From positions 23,573,150 to 23,637,149 of the forward strand of contig NC_069005.1 in the NCBI RefSeq assembly GCF_001194135.2: a stretch of DNA of 64,000 nt, given 5' to 3'. The DNA comes from Octopus bimaculoides. Taxonomy: Eukaryota. Below are positions 1 to 54,623 of this stretch, one piece after another. Numbering within the stretch: position 1 is the stretch's first letter; the number at the start of each line of letters is the position of its first letter. The position numbers and the translations under genes are program-made. The notes beneath the pieces are model-generated. The model was given only the letters and a program-made list of their open reading frames with translations, ran no database searches and was not told the DNA's origin.

Positions 1-72
1 CCTCACGTGGTATTGATGTTCACATGGTCAAAATTAACGTGAGTTATTTAGACATTAACAAATTTATTAGAA

Positions 73-136
73 TATTTAGCTGAAGATCAGAATAGAGTAT
101 TATGTACTCTTAACTGTGAAACAATTGTACTAAATT
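73..136 (+). ncRNA. Type I hammerhead ribozyme motif (probable Penelope pLTR/retrozyme)
   Basis: Core CTGAAGA at 80-86 and GAAA at 118-121. Stem III is A121-T128 and C122-G127 around the palindrome ACAATTGT, with a GUA cleavage triplet at 127-129. Stem I is a perfect 6 bp (ATTTAG 74-79 / CTAAAT 130-135). Stem II is CAG/CTG plus AGAGTA/TACTCT, with a T.T mismatch next to the core. Folded by eye. Confidence 0.8.
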
Positions 137-399
137 AACTAAAGGCAAGTGTTTTTTACTCTTCTCTATTGTTTTTTGTTCTGTGTGTATCAAAAATATC
201 GCTATCAATCTGGAGTAATAATTTGTAGTTTTGAAATCAGTAGTTCTTTGACTGCTATTTCTGAATTCTCAGTATGTTGGAGAAGCAGGTTACTGTCAAT
301 CCCTATATATTTATGTTTATACTTGCTAAAATATGTAAATATACACACATATATATACACTGGCACTCTGTTAGTTATGATGATGAATATTCTGGTCGA

Positions 400-2871: not shown

Positions 2872-3548
2872 ATATATATATGTATCTATGTTTGGGTGTG
2901 TGACTTTGTGTTTGTGCTTGTCTCTCACCACTGCTTCACAACTGGTGCTGGTTTGGTTATGTGTGTGTAACTTGGCAGTTNNNNNNNNNNNNNNNNNNNN
3001 NNNNNNNNNNNNNNNNNNNNNNNNNNNNNNNNNNNNNNNNNNNNNNNNNNNNNNNNNNNNNNNNNNNNNNNNNNNNNNNNNNNNNNNNNNNNNNNNNNNN
3101 NNNNNNNNNNNNNNNNNNNNNNNNNNNNNNNNNNNNNNNNNNNNNNNNNNNNNNNNNNNNNNNNNNNNNNNNNNNNNNNNNNNNNNNNNNNNNNNNNNNN
3201 NNNNNNNNNNNNNNNNNNNNNNNNNNNNNNNNNNNNNNNNNNNNNNNNNNNNNNNNNNNNNNNNNNNNNNNNNNNNNNNNNNNNNNNNNNNNNNNNNNNN
3301 NNNNNNNNNNNNNNNNNTATATATATATATATACATATATATATACACATAAATTTGTACATTATATATATATATATATAAATATACACACACACACATA
3401 CATACATTTTCATATATATATATATATATATATATACATGCATACACATAACAAACACACCCACACTCACAAATGTAGATAGTCAGATATAGATGTTTAT
3501 GTCATCTAATAAATCACTCCTGTCTCTAGAACACCTCATGTTGCTTAA

Positions 3549-4210: not shown

Positions 4211-5702
4211 NNNNNNNNNNNNNNNNNNNNNNNNNNNNNNNNNNNNNNNNNNNNNNNNNNNNNNNNNNNNNNNNNNNNNNNNNNNNNNNNNNNNNNNNNN
4301 NNNNNNNNNNNNNNNNNNNNNNNNNNNNNNNNNNNNNNNNNNNNNNNNNNNNNNNNNNNNNNNNNNNNNNNNNNNNNNNNNNNNNNNNNNNNNNNNNNNN
4401 NNNNNNNNNNNNNNNNNNNNNNNNNNNNNNNNNNNNNNNNNNNNNNNNNNNNNNNNNNNNNNNNNNNNNNNNNNNNNNNNNNNNNNNNNNNNNNNNNNNN
4501 NNNNNNNNNNNNNNNNNNNNNNNNNNNNNNNNNGGGGGGGGGGTGAATGGATAGATAGATAGTGAGATTGATTGATTGATAGATAGATAATGCACTTCAT
4601 GTTTACGTATTTCTTGTTTCAAGGATATAAACAAGCAGGCGGATTAGTTGTGAGGCAAGTGCGTGGTGAGCATTTGATGTCATTGATGTCATGTTCAGCT
4701 TAAACCTGAAACATTGTATGGCTTCTCACCAACTCCAAGAATTAAACAGCAAGGTTCAGAGTGTTTTGAGGAGAATAAGAGACAAATAAGTAGTTGGTCT
4801 TTCAACAAATACCATTTTTTTTTCCTTTTGTTCAGGAGTGGAGGGCAATTCTCTTGTTCCTTCACAGGGCCTCAAACCCTTGTAAGGAGAAAGGGAAGAA
4901 AGTATCCTCCAACTGAAGATTTGGTTCAAATGCTTGCGCCAGAGTGAACTATTGTTACCCAAGGTGCCAGGTAGTGGTGTTAAAACAAACAGTGGGTTAA
5001 ATCTACCACCCATATAATAAGCCATAGTAGGATTTAAACCCTGACTGCAAAGAGCTGGGGCAAATGAATGAAGCATTGTACCTGACATTTTAATATATAT
5101 GTCAATTTTCTGCCAATAATATAGAAAAGTACAAGGAAACATTTACCCCAACTGTGGAGTTTTTTCACACCGTAGTCTCAAATTTTGGGATGAGACAGAA
5201 ATTTCACAGGCTTTGAAACAGTTGCCAGATTTGTGAAAACAAAACAAGGAACATGTTAAGAGAAAAGGCAAATAAAATGCTGGAAGTCCATCACAAATGG
5301 GTGCTCAATCCCTTTGGAATGTTTGAACTTTATGGAATGCTAGGAGGTACCAGAGGAACAGGTGGTTATTAAAGACTACATCAGCAGTCTATTCACAACT
5401 AAGAAATCACAGCCCAAAGGTGAGACACTTTATGATTAGGCTAAGACTAGAAAACATTCATGGGTAATTTCTGGATGACTCATGGGATCTGAGTACAAAA
5501 GTGGCCTATGTTATGAGATACCCTGATCCTACCCAGGTGGTAGCTTTTCCCTCCTGTGAGACTGAATTATTGCACTGCATATTTGCTCCACTAATTATGT
5601 ATAATATACACATGTGGACTACCATGTTTTGTAGGCCTTTTGTATAAAACATTCGGCATTGCATATCAGGGTCATTGTGACCAATAACGAAATTTTTGAT
5701 TC

Positions 5703-9449: not shown

Positions 9450-10094
9450 GCAGACAAATCACAAATACCAAGATGGCCCTGCTTGATCTGTAGAAAAGGC
9501 ATAGGTAGAAAGTTCATAAAATGCACCCTGTGTAAGCTTTGGACACATAAGAGTTGCAGCAATATCAGAAGAAAGTTAACAAGGAAAATAGCTTTTGTGT
9601 GTAGAAACTGCACAAGTAGAATAAACACTGAAAATAGACCCTATCAACTGCCAATGGGGTAAGCTAGAGGTAGTAGATAGCTTCCGTTACCTAGGTGACA
9701 AGTTAGTAGCAGAAGTGGATGCTCTGAGAGCATAGCTGTGAGAATAAGATTAGGCTGGGCAAAGTTCAGAGAGCTCCTACCTCTGAAAGGCAGATTGTAT
9801 GATGTCTGTGTGCAAACAGCCATGCTACACGGCAGTGAAACATAGGCTGTGACAGCTGAGGACATGCATAGGCTTGAAAGAAATGAAGCCAGTATGCTTT
9901 GCTGGATGTTCAATGTCAATGTGCATGTTCAACAGAGTGTAAGCATCTTGAGAGAAAAGTTGGGTATAAGAGGCATCAGATGTGGTGTGCAAGAGAGACG
10001 AATGTGCTGGTATGGTCATGTGATGCATATGGACGAGGACAGCTGTGTAAAGAAGTGCTGATCTCTAACTGTGGAGGGAATCTGTGGTAGAGGT
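9450..10094 (+). mobile_element. RTE-clade LINE ORF2 3' remnant with Cys-rich insert
   Basis: RLGWAKFRELLPL..KGRLYDVCVQTAMLHGSET*AVTAEDMHRLERNEASMLCWM..LREKLGIRGIRCGVQERRMCWYGHVMHMDEDSCVKKC, a typical RTE C-terminus. It runs into a gap. Confidence 0.9.
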
Positions 10095-25889: not shown

Positions 25890-27140
25890 CAATAAACCTT
25901 CACTCACCACTGTCACACTAACCCACAAACCTTCACTCTCTACTGTCACATCAATAATTAATTATCTAGATAATACTTAGGTAAAATACATCAACTCTTA
26001 TGCTAAAAAATAATAGGGTATCTAATTCTAGTTTATTTTTTAAATTTCAAAGTACCTTCATTCACCACTGTCACACTAACCCACAAACCTTCATTCACCA
26101 CTGTCACACTAACCGACAAACCTTCACTCACCACTGTCACACTAACCGACAAACCTTCACACCACTGTCACACTAACCGACAAACCTTCACTCACCACTG
26201 TCACACTAACCCACAAACCTTCACTCACCACTGTCACACTAACCCACAAACCTTCACACCACTGTCACACTAACCCACAAACCTTCATTCACCACTGTCA
26301 CACTAACCCACAAACCTTCACTCACCACTGTCACACGAACCCACAAACCTTCANNNNNNNNNNNNNNNNNNNNNNNNNNNNNNNNNNNNNNNNNNNNNNN
26401 NNNNNNNNNNNNNNNNNNNNNNNNNNNNNNNNNNNNNNNNNNNNNNNNNNNNNNNNNNNNNNNNNNNNNNNNNNNNNNNNNNNNNNNNNNNNNNNNNNNN
26501 NNNNNNNNNNNNNNNNNNNNNNNNNNNNNNNNNNNNNNNNNNNNNNNNNNNNNNNNNNNNNNNNNNNNNNNNNNNNNNNNNNNNNNNNNNNNNNNNNNNN
26601 NNNNNNNNNNNNNNNNNNNNNNNNNNNNNNNNNNNNNNNNNNNNNNNNNNNNNNNNNNNNNNNNNNNNNNNNNNNNNNNNNNNNNNNNNNNNNNNNNNNN
26701 NNNNNNNNNNNNNNNNNNNNNNNNNNNNNNNNNNNNNNNNNNNNNNNNNNNNNNNNNNNNNNNNNNNNNNNNNNNNNNNNNNNNNNNNNNNNNNNNNNNN
26801 NNNNNNNNNNNNNNNNNNNNNNNNNNNNNNNNNNNNNNNNNNNNNNNNNNNNNNNNNNNNNNNNNNNNNNNNNNNNNNNNNNNNNNNNNNNNNNNNNNNN
26901 NNNNNNNNNNNNNNNNNNNNNNNNNNNNNNNNNNNNNNNNNNNNNNNNNNNNNCACTCGCCACTGTCACACTACAACCATTGATACATTAACCTTCATTC
27001 ACCACTGTCACATTAACCCACAATCCTTCACTAATCAGTTATACTAACCCACAAAACTTCAATCATCACTGACACAGTAACCCACAAACCTTCACTCGCC
27101 ACTGTCACACTACAACCATTGATACATTAACCTTCATTCA
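25890..27140 (+). repeat. Minisatellite, 33-35-bp unit ACCTTCACTCACCACTGTCACACTAACCCACAA, spanning a gap
   Basis: About 9 clean copies at 26054-26353, a gap at 26354-26953, and diverged copies on both sides. Confidence 0.92.
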
Positions 27141-52372: not shown

Positions 52373-52509
52373 GATAATAGATTCTAGAATGACCTCTCGG
52401 GAAGAACATATTTCTCTGAACTCTTTCATTGTTTTCTTTCTTCTATTTGGAAACGGGGAATATTTTACCCCAATATATTACAGGGTCATTAAACAACCTA
52501 TGACAGAAT

Positions 52510-52952
52510 AAAAAGTTTCGAATGGTACAACAATGCACCATATAATACAAAAGATGGACTATATACCTGTTGTAATTTAGTTATCTATAGTCCGATGATA
52601 TTTCGGAATTACAATTTCTTCTTCAGATCTTCTTAGATGAAGTCTCTGTTATCAGCTGTTTACTAACGGCTTTTATTTTTTCCCCAGGAGTGTCTCAGTA
52701 GTGGTCTCTCTCATGAGGAATTCTGGAAGGAGCTTCGTGAGACCACTACTGAGACACTTCCGGAACAAAAAAAAAAAAAAAAAAAAAAAAAAAGCCGTTA
52801 GTAAACAGTTGATAGCAGAGACTCCATCTAAGAAGATCTGAAGAAGGAATTGTATTCCGAAATATCATCGGACTATGGATAACTAAATTACAACAGGTAT
52901 ATAGTCCATTTTTTTGTATTATATTGCATTGTTGTACCATTCAAAACTTTTT
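52510..52952. repeat. Long foldback (~200-bp arms, ~28-nt loop) with a hammerhead-like core in each arm
   Basis: 52510-52708 is the reverse complement of 52739-52952, roughly 90% by eye apart from a polyA/T length difference. CTGAAGA-A-GGAAT-TGT-ATTCC-GAAA at 52838-52862. Confidence 0.92.
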
Positions 52953-53129
52953 GTTCTTTACAAACAATACACAATGCTTCAAGCAAACTACAATACTCTC
53001 TTAACCTATGACAGGTAACACAATATCTAATCATTTACTGACATCACCTATATATTTTGCCTCACTTCTCACCTACACTACTCAAAGGTTTTCACATTTA
53101 TATTGTATGGAAGTTCATCTGTGTAGACA

Positions 53130-53490: not shown

Positions 53491-54623
53491 GATTAAAAAT
53501 GAAGAGAAAAAGTTCTAATGTTTCCAGCACTAGCCCTGCATCAGAAGAAAAGTAAAGTATAGAAATAGAGGAGGAAAGTGAAAGAGGAAAAGTTGTTGTG
53601 GGGCGGGTAAAAATGTGTATGGTGTGAGGAGCCAGAGGGGATTATTATTCTGTGGGTGGGACTTAAGAAGGGGATGGGGGTGTGCACTTAGAAGAGTGCA
53701 ATAAGATAGACATAAGGGGGGAGATGCGTCTATGTGGGGTTTTTTGGCAGTAGGGGTGTGCTAGTGTAGAAGTGTACTGGCATGGGATGATGGGAATGTG
53801 GGTTAGGGATGTGTATGCATGTGTTGTGTGGAAGGAGAGATGAAAATAGAAGGGGGTGGCAAACGGAATGTGATGGGTGTGGTAGAAGTATATGAAAGAG
53901 TATGGGTGTCAGATGCAGCTGAGAGAGAAGTGAGAGGAGAACAAGAGGAAAGCAGGCTACTACTTCAGGTTCTGTCAGCCAATTTCATTTGCAAGGCAGG
54001 CATTGACTGACTTGCAGCTAGAAGTATAAACCGAACCCCTAACCATCTAGTTCTAAAGCAAACTTCTTAACCACACAACCATGGCTATGCACACACACAC
54101 ACACACACACACACACACNNNNNNNNNNNNNNNNNNNNNNNNNNNNNNNNNNNNNNNNNNNNNNNNNNNNNNNNNNNNNNNNNNNNNNNNNNNNNNNNNN
54201 NNNNNNNNNNNNNNNNNNNNNNNNNNNNNNNNNNNNNNNNNNNNNNNNNNNNNNNNNNNNNNNNNNNNNNNNNNNNNNNNNNNNNNNNNNNNNNNNNNNN
54301 NNNNNNNNNNNNNNNNNNNNNNNNNNNNNNNNNNNNNNNNNNNNNNNNNNNNNNNNNNNNNNNNNNNNNNNNNNNNNNNNNNNNNNNNNNNNNNNNNNNN
54401 NNNNNNNNNNNNNNNNNNNNNNNNNNNNNNNNNNNNNNNNNNNNNNNNNNNNNNNNNNNNNNNNNNNNNNNNNNNNNNNNNNNNNNNNNNNNNNNNNNNN
54501 NNNNNNNNNNNNNNNNNNNNNNNNNNNNNNNNNNNNNNNNNNNNNNNNNNNNNNNNNNNNNNNNNNNNNNNNNNNNNNNNNNNNNNNNNNNNNNNNNNNN
54601 NNNNNNNNNNNNNNNNNNNNNNN

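What the first reader, a model, noticed from the sequence alone, without database searches (positions are those of the whole stretch)
73..136. Complete type I hammerhead ribozyme fold with a palindromic stem III
Seen in the sequence: all core nucleotides (CUGAAGA, GAAA, GUA cleavage triplet), a perfect 6-bp stem I, and a 2-bp stem III whose loop completes the palindrome ACAATTGT. Stem II is long (CAG/CTG, 3x3 internal loop, AGAGTA/TACTCT) and opens with a U.U mismatch at 10.1-11.1. Established: Penelope-like element pLTRs and animal retrozymes carry type I hammerheads with palindromic stem III that cleave as dimers. Inference: this is such a motif in an octopus-like genome, and possibly still self-cleaving. 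It lies in sequence the ORF track and SINE families do not explain.
Basis: partly seen in the sequence, partly recalled or inferred. Interest (0 to 1): 0.85.

Follow-up and report, generated by a model that had tools for sequence, protein, structure and literature searches.

The report
Lone hammerhead-ribozyme-like motif in octopus-like DNA
A 62-base stretch at the start of the window has every sequence feature of a small self-cutting RNA (a type I hammerhead ribozyme) of the kind carried by animal mobile elements, but it is a single copy, scores below the curated database cut-off, and could not be shown to belong to a repeat family or to cut.

Summary
Window 74-135 (+) holds a complete type I hammerhead layout: 6-bp helix I, CUGAAGA, U.U at 10.1/11.1, an interrupted helix II, GAAA, the 8-nt palindrome ACAATTGT, and a GUA site with the cut predicted after A129.

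It is unlikely to be chance at the scale of one window:
- Rfam Hammerhead_1 gives 22.7 bits, about 1.5e-4 expected per family per window.
- A model I built from four tested animal hammerheads ranks it first in the window (19.1 bits).
- A composition-matched simulation gives 2e-5 to 1e-3 per window.

Chance is not excluded at genome scale, where about 1 to 40 such hits are expected. The score is also below Rfam's gathering cut-off of 34 bits.

The architecture matches the tested axolotl retrozyme ribozyme HHR_Amex2: U.U plus 3 bp, an 8-nt palindrome, GUA and a 6-bp helix I.

I found no second copy, no tandem array and no Penelope RT or endonuclease in the 64 kb. The sequence upstream is cut off by the window edge, and no octopus DNA was reachable with these tools.

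The best reading is a solitary copy or relic of a retrozyme- or Penelope-type hammerhead. Cleavage is untested and probably weak without a partner copy. Interest is modest.

The parts
67..70 (+). Distal closing stem of helix I, 5' strand (TTAG). It pairs with 139-142.
   Evidence: Sequence. Recovered in the minimum-energy fold of 63-146.
71..73 (+). Internal loop in helix I, 5' side (AAT), in the position of 'loop 1' after 6 bp.
74..79 (+). Helix I, 5' strand (ATTTAG).
   Evidence: Six Watson-Crick pairs with 130-135. Aligned as helix I by Rfam RF00163 and by model R1.
80..86 (+). Catalytic core box CUGANGA (CTGAAGA; C3 to A9).
87..117 (+). Helix II, 31 nt. It runs T87.T117 (U.U at 10.1/11.1), then CAG 88-90 / CTG 114-116, then a 3x3 loop AAT 91-93 / TAA 111-113, then AGAGTA 94-99 / TACTCT 105-110 with loop TTATG 100-104.
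   Evidence: Sequence. Both parts are recovered by RNAfold. Both covariance models treat the extra length as an insertion.
118..121 (+). Core box GAAA (G12, A13, A14, A15.1).
121..128 (+). Helix III: the 8-nt palindrome ACAATTGT. In a monomer it gives 2 bp (A121-T128, C122-G127) and an AATT tetraloop. In a dimer it gives an 8-bp intermolecular helix.
   Evidence: Sequence. Cofold of two copies forms the 8-bp duplex, -32 versus 2 x -11 kcal/mol. The length equals that of the Rfam consensus palindrome ACGcgCGU.
129..130 (+). Predicted cleavage site: A129 is position 17 of the GUA triplet, and the scissile bond lies between 129 and 130.
   Evidence: Position follows from hammerhead numbering applied to the sequence. 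Cleavage itself was not tested.
130..135 (+). Helix I, 3' strand (CTAAAT).
136..142 (+). Internal loop, 3' side (TAA 136-138), and the closing stem, 3' strand (CTAA 139-142).

Best explanation
Window 67-142 (+) is a genuine hammerhead-derived sequence. I read it as a solitary copy, or the last visible copy, of a type I hammerhead of the animal retrozyme / Penelope-like-element lineage.

How it would work (inferred, not shown):
- When transcribed, the RNA would fold into the three-helix junction.
- Helix III is too short in a monomer (2 bp plus a tetraloop). Efficient cutting would therefore need a second copy, pairing through ACAAUUGU to make an 8-bp helix III.
- The 2'-OH of A129 would then attack the A129-C130 phosphate, leaving a 2',3'-cyclic phosphate and a 5'-OH.
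- In the parent element this step cuts unit-length RNAs out of multimeric transcripts, ready for circularisation and reverse transcription.
- At this locus no partner copy is visible, so the motif is most likely a leftover. At best it would cut its host transcript weakly.

Shown here: the sequence anatomy, its statistical rarity, and its match to tested ribozymes. Inferred: origin from a mobile element, dimer dependence, and any activity.
For: - The core is complete and all three helices are in type I topology.
- Rfam Hammerhead_1 aligns end to end at 22.7 bits, E = 8.8e-4 for the 91-nt search.
- Model R1, built only from coral, mussel and two axolotl retrozyme hammerheads that were tested in vitro (sequences; model), puts 74-135 first among all sites on both strands with filters off.
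- Composition-matched simulations give 2e-5 to 1e-3 expected per window.
- The architecture equals that of axolotl HHR_Amex2: 6-bp helix I, U.U then 3 bp in helix II, an 8-nt palindromic helix III and a GUA site (my parsing; the paper's text). That ribozyme is active.
- The geometry of 6 bp in helix I and 4 positions in helix II before a loop matches the canonical description in PMC4209133.
- The fold of 63-146 recovers helices I and II, and a cofolded dimer gains 10 kcal/mol through the palindrome.
- Octopus genomes are rich in Penelope-like elements, so a source of such motifs exists.
Against: - The score is below Rfam's gathering cut-off (22.7 versus 34 bits), and standard filters dropped the hit.
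- It is not G10.1-C11.1.
- Helix II is twice the usual length and interrupted.
- The canonical loop 1 / loop 2 contact nucleotides cannot be recognised.
- The window holds no other copy, no tandem array and no RT or endonuclease.
- The AU-rich fold is not more stable than shuffles, and in the 1-200 context the minimum-energy fold is different.
- About 1 to 40 such motifs per octopus-sized genome are expected by chance, so selection from many windows would weaken the statistics.
- R1's E-values look optimistic: five hits at E <= 0.55.
- No paper in the held library reports cephalopod hammerheads.
Confidence: 0.55

Rival explanations
1. Chance match. AT-rich, repeat-rich DNA happens to spell the 13 core bases with short AU-rich complementary flanks. 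There is no ribozyme ancestry and no function.
For: - Expected genome-wide counts are not negligible: about 6 per 2.7 Gb at 22.7 bits or more, and 0.8 to 40 by descriptor.
- The score is below the Rfam gathering cut-off.
- The fold is no more stable than shuffles.
- No relatives were found anywhere I could look.
- Loose hammerhead-like cores are common: about 0.6 per window with a helix I of at least 4 bp, and several are present in this window.
- Model R1 also gives 16.6 bits to a site with a broken core (4677-4724).
Against: - The per-window expectation is 2e-5 to 1e-3.
- Several features that neither Rfam nor my descriptor scores also fit: the closing stem 67-70 / 139-142, the 6+4 helix geometry, and a perfect 6-7 bp distal helix II.
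- It matches a tested ribozyme architecture in detail.
Confidence: 0.3
2. A single-copy, host-retained (domesticated) hammerhead that acts in cis on a host transcript, for example inside an intron or UTR. Known examples are the amniote intronic hammerheads HH9/HH10 and the discontinuous 3'-UTR hammerheads (recalled from established literature, not checked here).
For: - It is single-copy in the window.
- All helices are perfect and the core is intact, which is not typical of an old decaying relic.
- The extended helices I and II could stabilise a monomer.
Against: - No exon or host gene could be identified in the window. Pfam hits are only TE-like fragments.
- Helix III is of the weak, dimer-dependent type, which suits tandem elements and not a cis-acting single site.
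- No cross-species conservation data are available.
Confidence: 0.1
3. Part of some other structured or repeated element, such as an unclassified SINE-like retroposon ending in the TA-rich stretch at 299-366, in which the hammerhead resemblance is incidental.
For: - Region 1-366 is unexplained and ends in a TA-rich tract like the tails of the SINEs in this window.
- A 17-mer at 144-160 matches the SINE core at 15-16 of 17 positions.
Against: - No other Rfam family fits 60-150.
- The SINE similarity does not extend beyond the 17-mer.
- No copy of 1-366 occurs elsewhere in the window.
Confidence: 0.05

Closest known systems
Axolotl retrozyme hammerhead HHR_Amex2 (construct Rtz_353; Cervera and de la Pena 2020, PMC7229834)
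   Same: Type I topology. 6-bp helix I. U.U mismatch at 10.1/11.1 followed by exactly 3 bp. An 8-nt palindromic helix III (ACACGUGU there, ACAAUUGU here), which is 2 bp plus a tetraloop in a monomer. A GUA cleavage triplet.
   Different: In Amex2 helix II ends in a 5-nt loop. Here it continues through a 3x3 internal loop into a 6-7 bp hairpin (31 versus 13 nt). N7 is U there and A here. Amex2 sits in about 350-bp tandem repeats with about 60,000 copies, whereas this motif is solitary in 64 kb. Amex2 has measured cleavage and this motif has none.
Invertebrate non-LTR retrozyme hammerheads (mussel Mg353, coral Amil224; PMC7229834)
   Same: Canonical core. 6-bp helix I. [quoted passage not shown] A low-GC context. 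The mussel ribozymes also lack the archetypal loop 1 / loop 2 nucleotides.
   Different: Those ribozymes have G10.1-C11.1, a 4-bp helix II with a 5-nt loop and a GUC site. They lie in 220-390-bp tandem repeats with thousands of copies. None of these holds here.
[quoted passage not shown]
   Same: Type I topology. A helix II larger than usual. A palindromic 15.2-16.2 / loop 3. Expected to act as dimers. They often occur as single dispersed motifs from truncated elements. Penelope-like elements are abundant in octopus.
   Different: [quoted passage not shown] Here there is a U.U mismatch, no G-C pair and a 6-bp helix I. No RT or GIY-YIG ORF or pLTR arrangement is visible.
Rfam RF00163 Hammerhead_1
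   Same: Full-length alignment to model positions 1-45, covering helix I, both core boxes, the 8-nt helix III palindrome and the cleavage site.
   Different: 22.7 bits against a gathering score of 34. Helix II is not aligned and is treated as a 31-nt insertion in place of 14 nt.

Membership tests
Hammerhead ribozyme, type I (general class) | Conserved core CUGANGA ... GAAA ... UH with A15.1-U16.1 | tested here: met
   CTGAAGA 80-86, GAAA 118-121, T128 and A129.
Hammerhead ribozyme, type I (general class) | Three helices around the core, with helix I open-ended | tested here: met
   Helix I 74-79 / 130-135, helix II 88-116, helix III 121-128. Aligned in this way by RF00163 and by R1.
Hammerhead ribozyme, type I (general class) | G10.1-C11.1 pair closing helix II | tested here: not met
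   T87 faces T117. This feature is not absolute: HHR_Amex2 has the same U.U and cleaves.
Hammerhead ribozyme, type I (general class) | Loop 1 / loop 2 tertiary contact nucleotides | tested here: inconclusive
   Loops occur at the canonical distances (after 6 bp in helix I and 4 positions in helix II). However, both are symmetric AAU/UAA internal loops and not the canonical loops. Mussel retrozyme ribozymes also lack the archetypal nucleotides.
Hammerhead ribozyme, type I (general class) | Site-specific self-cleavage | not testable with these tools
   This needs in vitro transcription of monomer and dimer constructs.
Rfam RF00163 Hammerhead_1 | Score at or above the curated gathering score (34 bits) | tested here: not met
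   22.7 bits. No hit at gathering on the whole window.
Animal non-LTR retrozyme | Tandem repeats of about 170-400 bp, each with one hammerhead | tested here: not met
   No second copy downstream and no tandem period. Only 73 nt are visible upstream, so an array ending at this copy cannot be excluded.
Animal non-LTR retrozyme | Type I hammerhead with a short palindromic helix III | tested here: met
   ACAATTGT 121-128. Compare the tested constructs.
Animal non-LTR retrozyme | Expression as small circular RNAs | not testable with these tools
   No transcriptome data were available.
Penelope-like element pLTR hammerhead | Location in a pLTR flanking an RT plus GIY-YIG ORF | tested here: not met
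   No RT or GIY-YIG Pfam match in 218 ORF segments of the window. The upstream side lies outside the window.
Penelope-like element pLTR hammerhead | [quoted passage not shown] | tested here: not met
   No register gives a bulge followed by a G-C pair. The criteria are taken from PMC4209133.
Penelope-like element pLTR hammerhead | Membership of a multicopy consensus family with covariation | not testable with these tools
   No octopus DNA beyond the window was reachable. There is no second copy within the window.

The most novel reading that the evidence does not exclude
The motif is a live member of a so far undescribed cephalopod hammerhead or retrozyme family. In that family helix II is extended, and the matching AAU/UAA internal loops in helices I and II replace the usual loop-loop contact, so the ribozyme would be active with a new kind of tertiary stabilisation.
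Probability: 0.1. Interest if true: 0.5.

Novelty: new member of a known kind. Interest (0 to 1): 0.3.

Why it matters
If it is real, it would extend the retrozyme / Penelope-type hammerheads to cephalopods. I found no report of them there in the searchable literature. It would also add a second natural example, after axolotl HHR_Amex2, of a hammerhead with U.U at 10.1/11.1, here combined with an unusually long, internally looped helix II.

That would be a small addition to a well-mapped field. Such ribozymes are known in thousands of copies in many animals, so a further example is expected and not surprising. If it is a chance match, it shows that complete hammerhead descriptors do occur by chance at the scale of a few per large AT-rich genome.

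Tried and rejected
1. Rfam on the whole window at gathering, and on 1-400 at E <= 10, gave no hammerhead. This turned out to be a filter effect, because the 91-nt search found it.
2. I looked for copies inside the window with blastn (word sizes 9 and 7) and nhmmer and found none. The weak match at 44881-44913 has no core upstream and I rejected it.
3. I tried to get the upstream flank or other octopus loci.
   - The look-up of encoding contigs with ORF 149-427 found nothing.
   - The exact look-up of ten window ORFs found nothing.
   - The search for homologous proteins with the LINE RT remnant at 42555-42845 gave no hit.
   - Metagenome scans found nothing, either with a hammerhead-specific pattern or with the conserved SINE core.
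   - The collections available here appear to hold no octopus DNA.
4. I looked for Penelope RT / GIY-YIG or host exons with Pfam on 218 ORF segments. Only PHD-like and Mos1 HTH fragments appeared.
5. Supplementary files of PMC8557442 and PMC4209133 are not held as text.
6. I considered a Penelope minimal hammerhead in the hairpin at 52505-52957. It fits several published criteria, but helix I is only 3 bp and Rfam gives no hammerhead hit even on 76 nt. It is not used as support.
7. I considered the second R1 hit at 4677-4724 as a possible partner or decayed copy. Its core is broken (TTGATGTCA), its flanks are unrelated, and it is not repeated in the window.
8. I checked whether the 17-mer at 144-160 makes the motif part of the SINE. 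The similarity stops at the 17-mer.

Full report
**What is there.** The sequence at window 67-142 (+) reads: TTAG-AAT-ATTTAG-CTGAAGA-T-CAG-AAT-AGAGTA-TTATG-TACTCT-TAA-CTG-T-GAAA-CAATTG-T-A-CTAAAT-TAA-CTAA.
- In hammerhead numbering, helix I is 74-79 / 130-135 (six Watson-Crick pairs).
- The core is C3-A9 at 80-86 and G12-A15.1 at 118-121.
- U16.1 is T128 and H17 is A129, so the predicted cut is between 129 and 130.
- Helix II opens with T87 facing T117, then has 3 bp, a symmetric 3x3 internal loop and a perfect 6-bp stem (7 bp with a U.G pair).
- Helix III is the 8-nt palindrome ACAATTGT. In a monomer this gives 2 bp plus an AAUU tetraloop.

In addition, helix I continues beyond a 3x3 internal loop into a 4-bp closing stem (67-70 / 139-142), which the minimum-energy fold of 63-146 recovers together with helices I and II.

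**Is it more than chance?**
- *Rfam at standard settings.* Rfam gives nothing on the whole window at gathering thresholds and nothing on 1-400 at E <= 10.
- *Rfam on 60-150 alone.* With laxer filters, Hammerhead_1 (RF00163) aligns end to end with 74-135 at 22.7 bits, E = 8.8e-4 for that search, against a gathering score of 34. Helix II is skipped as an insertion. Rescaled by me, this is about 1.5e-4 expected per family per 64-kb window and about 6 per 2.7-Gb genome.
- *An independent model.* I took four animal retrozyme hammerheads that were tested in vitro (coral Amil224, mussel Mg353, axolotl Ax353 and Ax330; sequences from the supplement of PMC7229834). I aligned them, built a covariance model without the candidate, and searched both strands of the whole window with filters off. 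The candidate is the top hit (19.1 bits, rough E = 0.003). That model's E-values look somewhat optimistic, with five hits at E <= 0.55.
- *A descriptor scan.* My own scan finds the candidate as the only site in the window with a helix I of at least 6 bp.
- *Simulation.* In 400-600 Mb of first-order Markov sequence with the window's composition, sites with a helix I of at least 6 bp, a helix II of at least 3 bp and any palindromic helix III occur at 1e-3 per window (about 40 per genome). With an 8-nt palindrome they occur at about 2e-5 per window, or about 0.8 per genome.

The motif is therefore unexpected in one window but not at genome scale. If this window was picked from very many, the statistics weaken. 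The AU-rich fold of 73-136 is no more stable than shuffles.

**Comparison with tested ribozymes.** The closest match is axolotl HHR_Amex2: ACCUCA-CUGAUGA-U-GCC-CACUA-GGC-U-GAAA-CACGUG-U-A-UGGGGU (my parsing).
- It shares with the candidate a 6-bp helix I, U.U at 10.1/11.1 followed by exactly 3 bp, an 8-nt palindromic helix III and a GUA site.
- The paper describes the U.U mismatch at the base of helix II. It reports 22% cleavage in one hour for the monomer and much better cleavage for dimers.
- Cervera and De la Pena (PMC4209133) describe canonical animal type I hammerheads as having a helix I of 6 bp, a helix II of 4 bp, and a helix III of 1-2 bp capped by a 2-4-nt palindromic loop, working as dimers. 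The candidate has that geometry if its internal loops stand in for loops 1 and 2.
- What differs is the long continuation of helix II and the absence of recognisable loop-loop contact nucleotides. The mussel retrozyme ribozymes also lack those nucleotides.
- In silico, two copies of 63-146 cofold at -32 kcal/mol against 2 x -11, through the 8-bp ACAAUUGU duplex.

**Context.**
- Nothing in the window links the motif to a mobile element. Region 1-460 has no other copy in the 64 kb.
- There is no tandem period.
- From about 367 onward the sequence is SINE.
- Pfam on 218 ORF segments finds no reverse transcriptase or GIY-YIG domain. The only hits of note are a PHD-like finger at 9450-9659 and a Mos1 HTH fragment (for the finger). 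By eye, I also noted LINE-like remnants at 9887-10087 and 42555-42845.
- The motif lies 73 nt from the window edge, so an upstream array or a Penelope body cannot be seen.
- Against the Penelope minimal-hammerhead criteria of PMC4209133 (an extra nucleotide between 9 and 10.1, conserved G10.1-C11.1, palindromic 15.2-16.2, consensus families), only the palindrome is met.
- Octopus genomes do carry many Penelope-like elements. I found no paper describing cephalopod hammerheads.

**Attempts to find relatives elsewhere.** All failed. The window's ORFs are not in the protein collection. The LINE fragment found no homologues. Two metagenome scans, one hammerhead-specific and one with the SINE core, found nothing. 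The test that matters most, a conserved multicopy family with covariation, therefore remains undone.

**Verdict.**

| Reading | Confidence |
|---|---|
| Real hammerhead-derived sequence of the retrozyme / Penelope lineage, present as a solitary copy or relic. It has every sequence requirement for cleavage but a dimer-dependent helix III and no visible partner, so any activity at this locus is probably weak. | 0.55 |
| Chance match | 0.3 |
| Single-copy host-retained ribozyme | 0.1 |
| Incidental resemblance inside another element | 0.05 |

It behaves on paper like a type I hammerhead. Formal membership is provisional: the core and topology are met, but the Rfam cut-off and G10.1-C11.1 are not, and family and activity are untested. 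Hammerheads of this kind are already known in thousands of copies in many animals, so the finding is of modest interest unless the extended helix II variant proves active.

Noticed in passing
window 52505-52957 (motifs at 52835-52869 + and 52629-52594 -): This is a roughly 450-bp near-perfect hairpin with arms 83-97% complementary, a central A(30) run and an inner hairpin. Each arm carries CTGAAGA-A-GGAAT-TGT-ATTCC-GAAA-TA-TC. That fits several published marks of Penelope minimal hammerheads: an extra nucleotide after A9, G10.1-C11.1, a palindromic AUAU, and paired motifs on opposite strands 100-700 bp apart. However, helix I is only 3 bp, Rfam gives no hammerhead hit, and there is no other copy in the window.
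   Followed up: partly
window 4677-4724 (+): This is the second-best hit of my hammerhead model (16.6 bits, rough E = 0.016): ATGTCA-TTGATGTCA-...-GAAACATTGTA-TGGCTT. The core is broken (U at position 3 and a 2-nt insertion), helix II does not pair, the flanks are unrelated to 1-200, and it is not repeated in the window. It is probably chance, but a decayed hammerhead is not excluded.
   Followed up: partly
window 67-73/136-142 and 87-93/111-117: The same module, (T/C)AG-AAT ... TAA-CT(A/G), occurs twice and nested: once as the outer part of helix I and once as the inner part of helix II. Both helices therefore carry an identical symmetric AAU/UAA internal loop. I have no explanation for this.
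   Followed up: no
window 144-160: GGCAAGTGTTTTTTACT, two bases after the closing stem, matches the conserved core GGCAAGTGTCTTCTACT of the tRNA-like SINE. That SINE is present in at least 9 copies in the window (for example near 861, 1254, 10631, 13738, 15713, 16584, 40110 and 44568). The similarity does not extend into the flanks.
   Followed up: partly
window 9450-9659, 9887-10087, 42555-42845: These look like remnants of a LINE-like retrotransposon. They comprise a PHD-like zinc finger (Pfam PHD, best E = 1.2e-6 among the segments) and two related RT-C-terminal-like fragments (..GSETWTL.., ..ERK(I/V)GYKR..). A Mos1 transposase HTH (PF17906, E = 4e-13) also lies somewhere in 1-42400, but I did not locate it. 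The 42555-42845 fragment found no homologue in the protein collection.
   Followed up: partly
window 2-8 / 38-44: A 7-bp inverted repeat, CTCACGT / ACGTGAG, lies just upstream of the motif. In the 1-200 minimum-energy fold it forms the base of a separate hairpin.
   Followed up: no
window, 13 N runs (for example 2981-3317, 26354-26953, 54119-54623): The window is draft scaffold sequence with 3641 N in 13 gaps, many flanked by microsatellites. Copies of any element hidden in the gaps would be missed.
   Followed up: no
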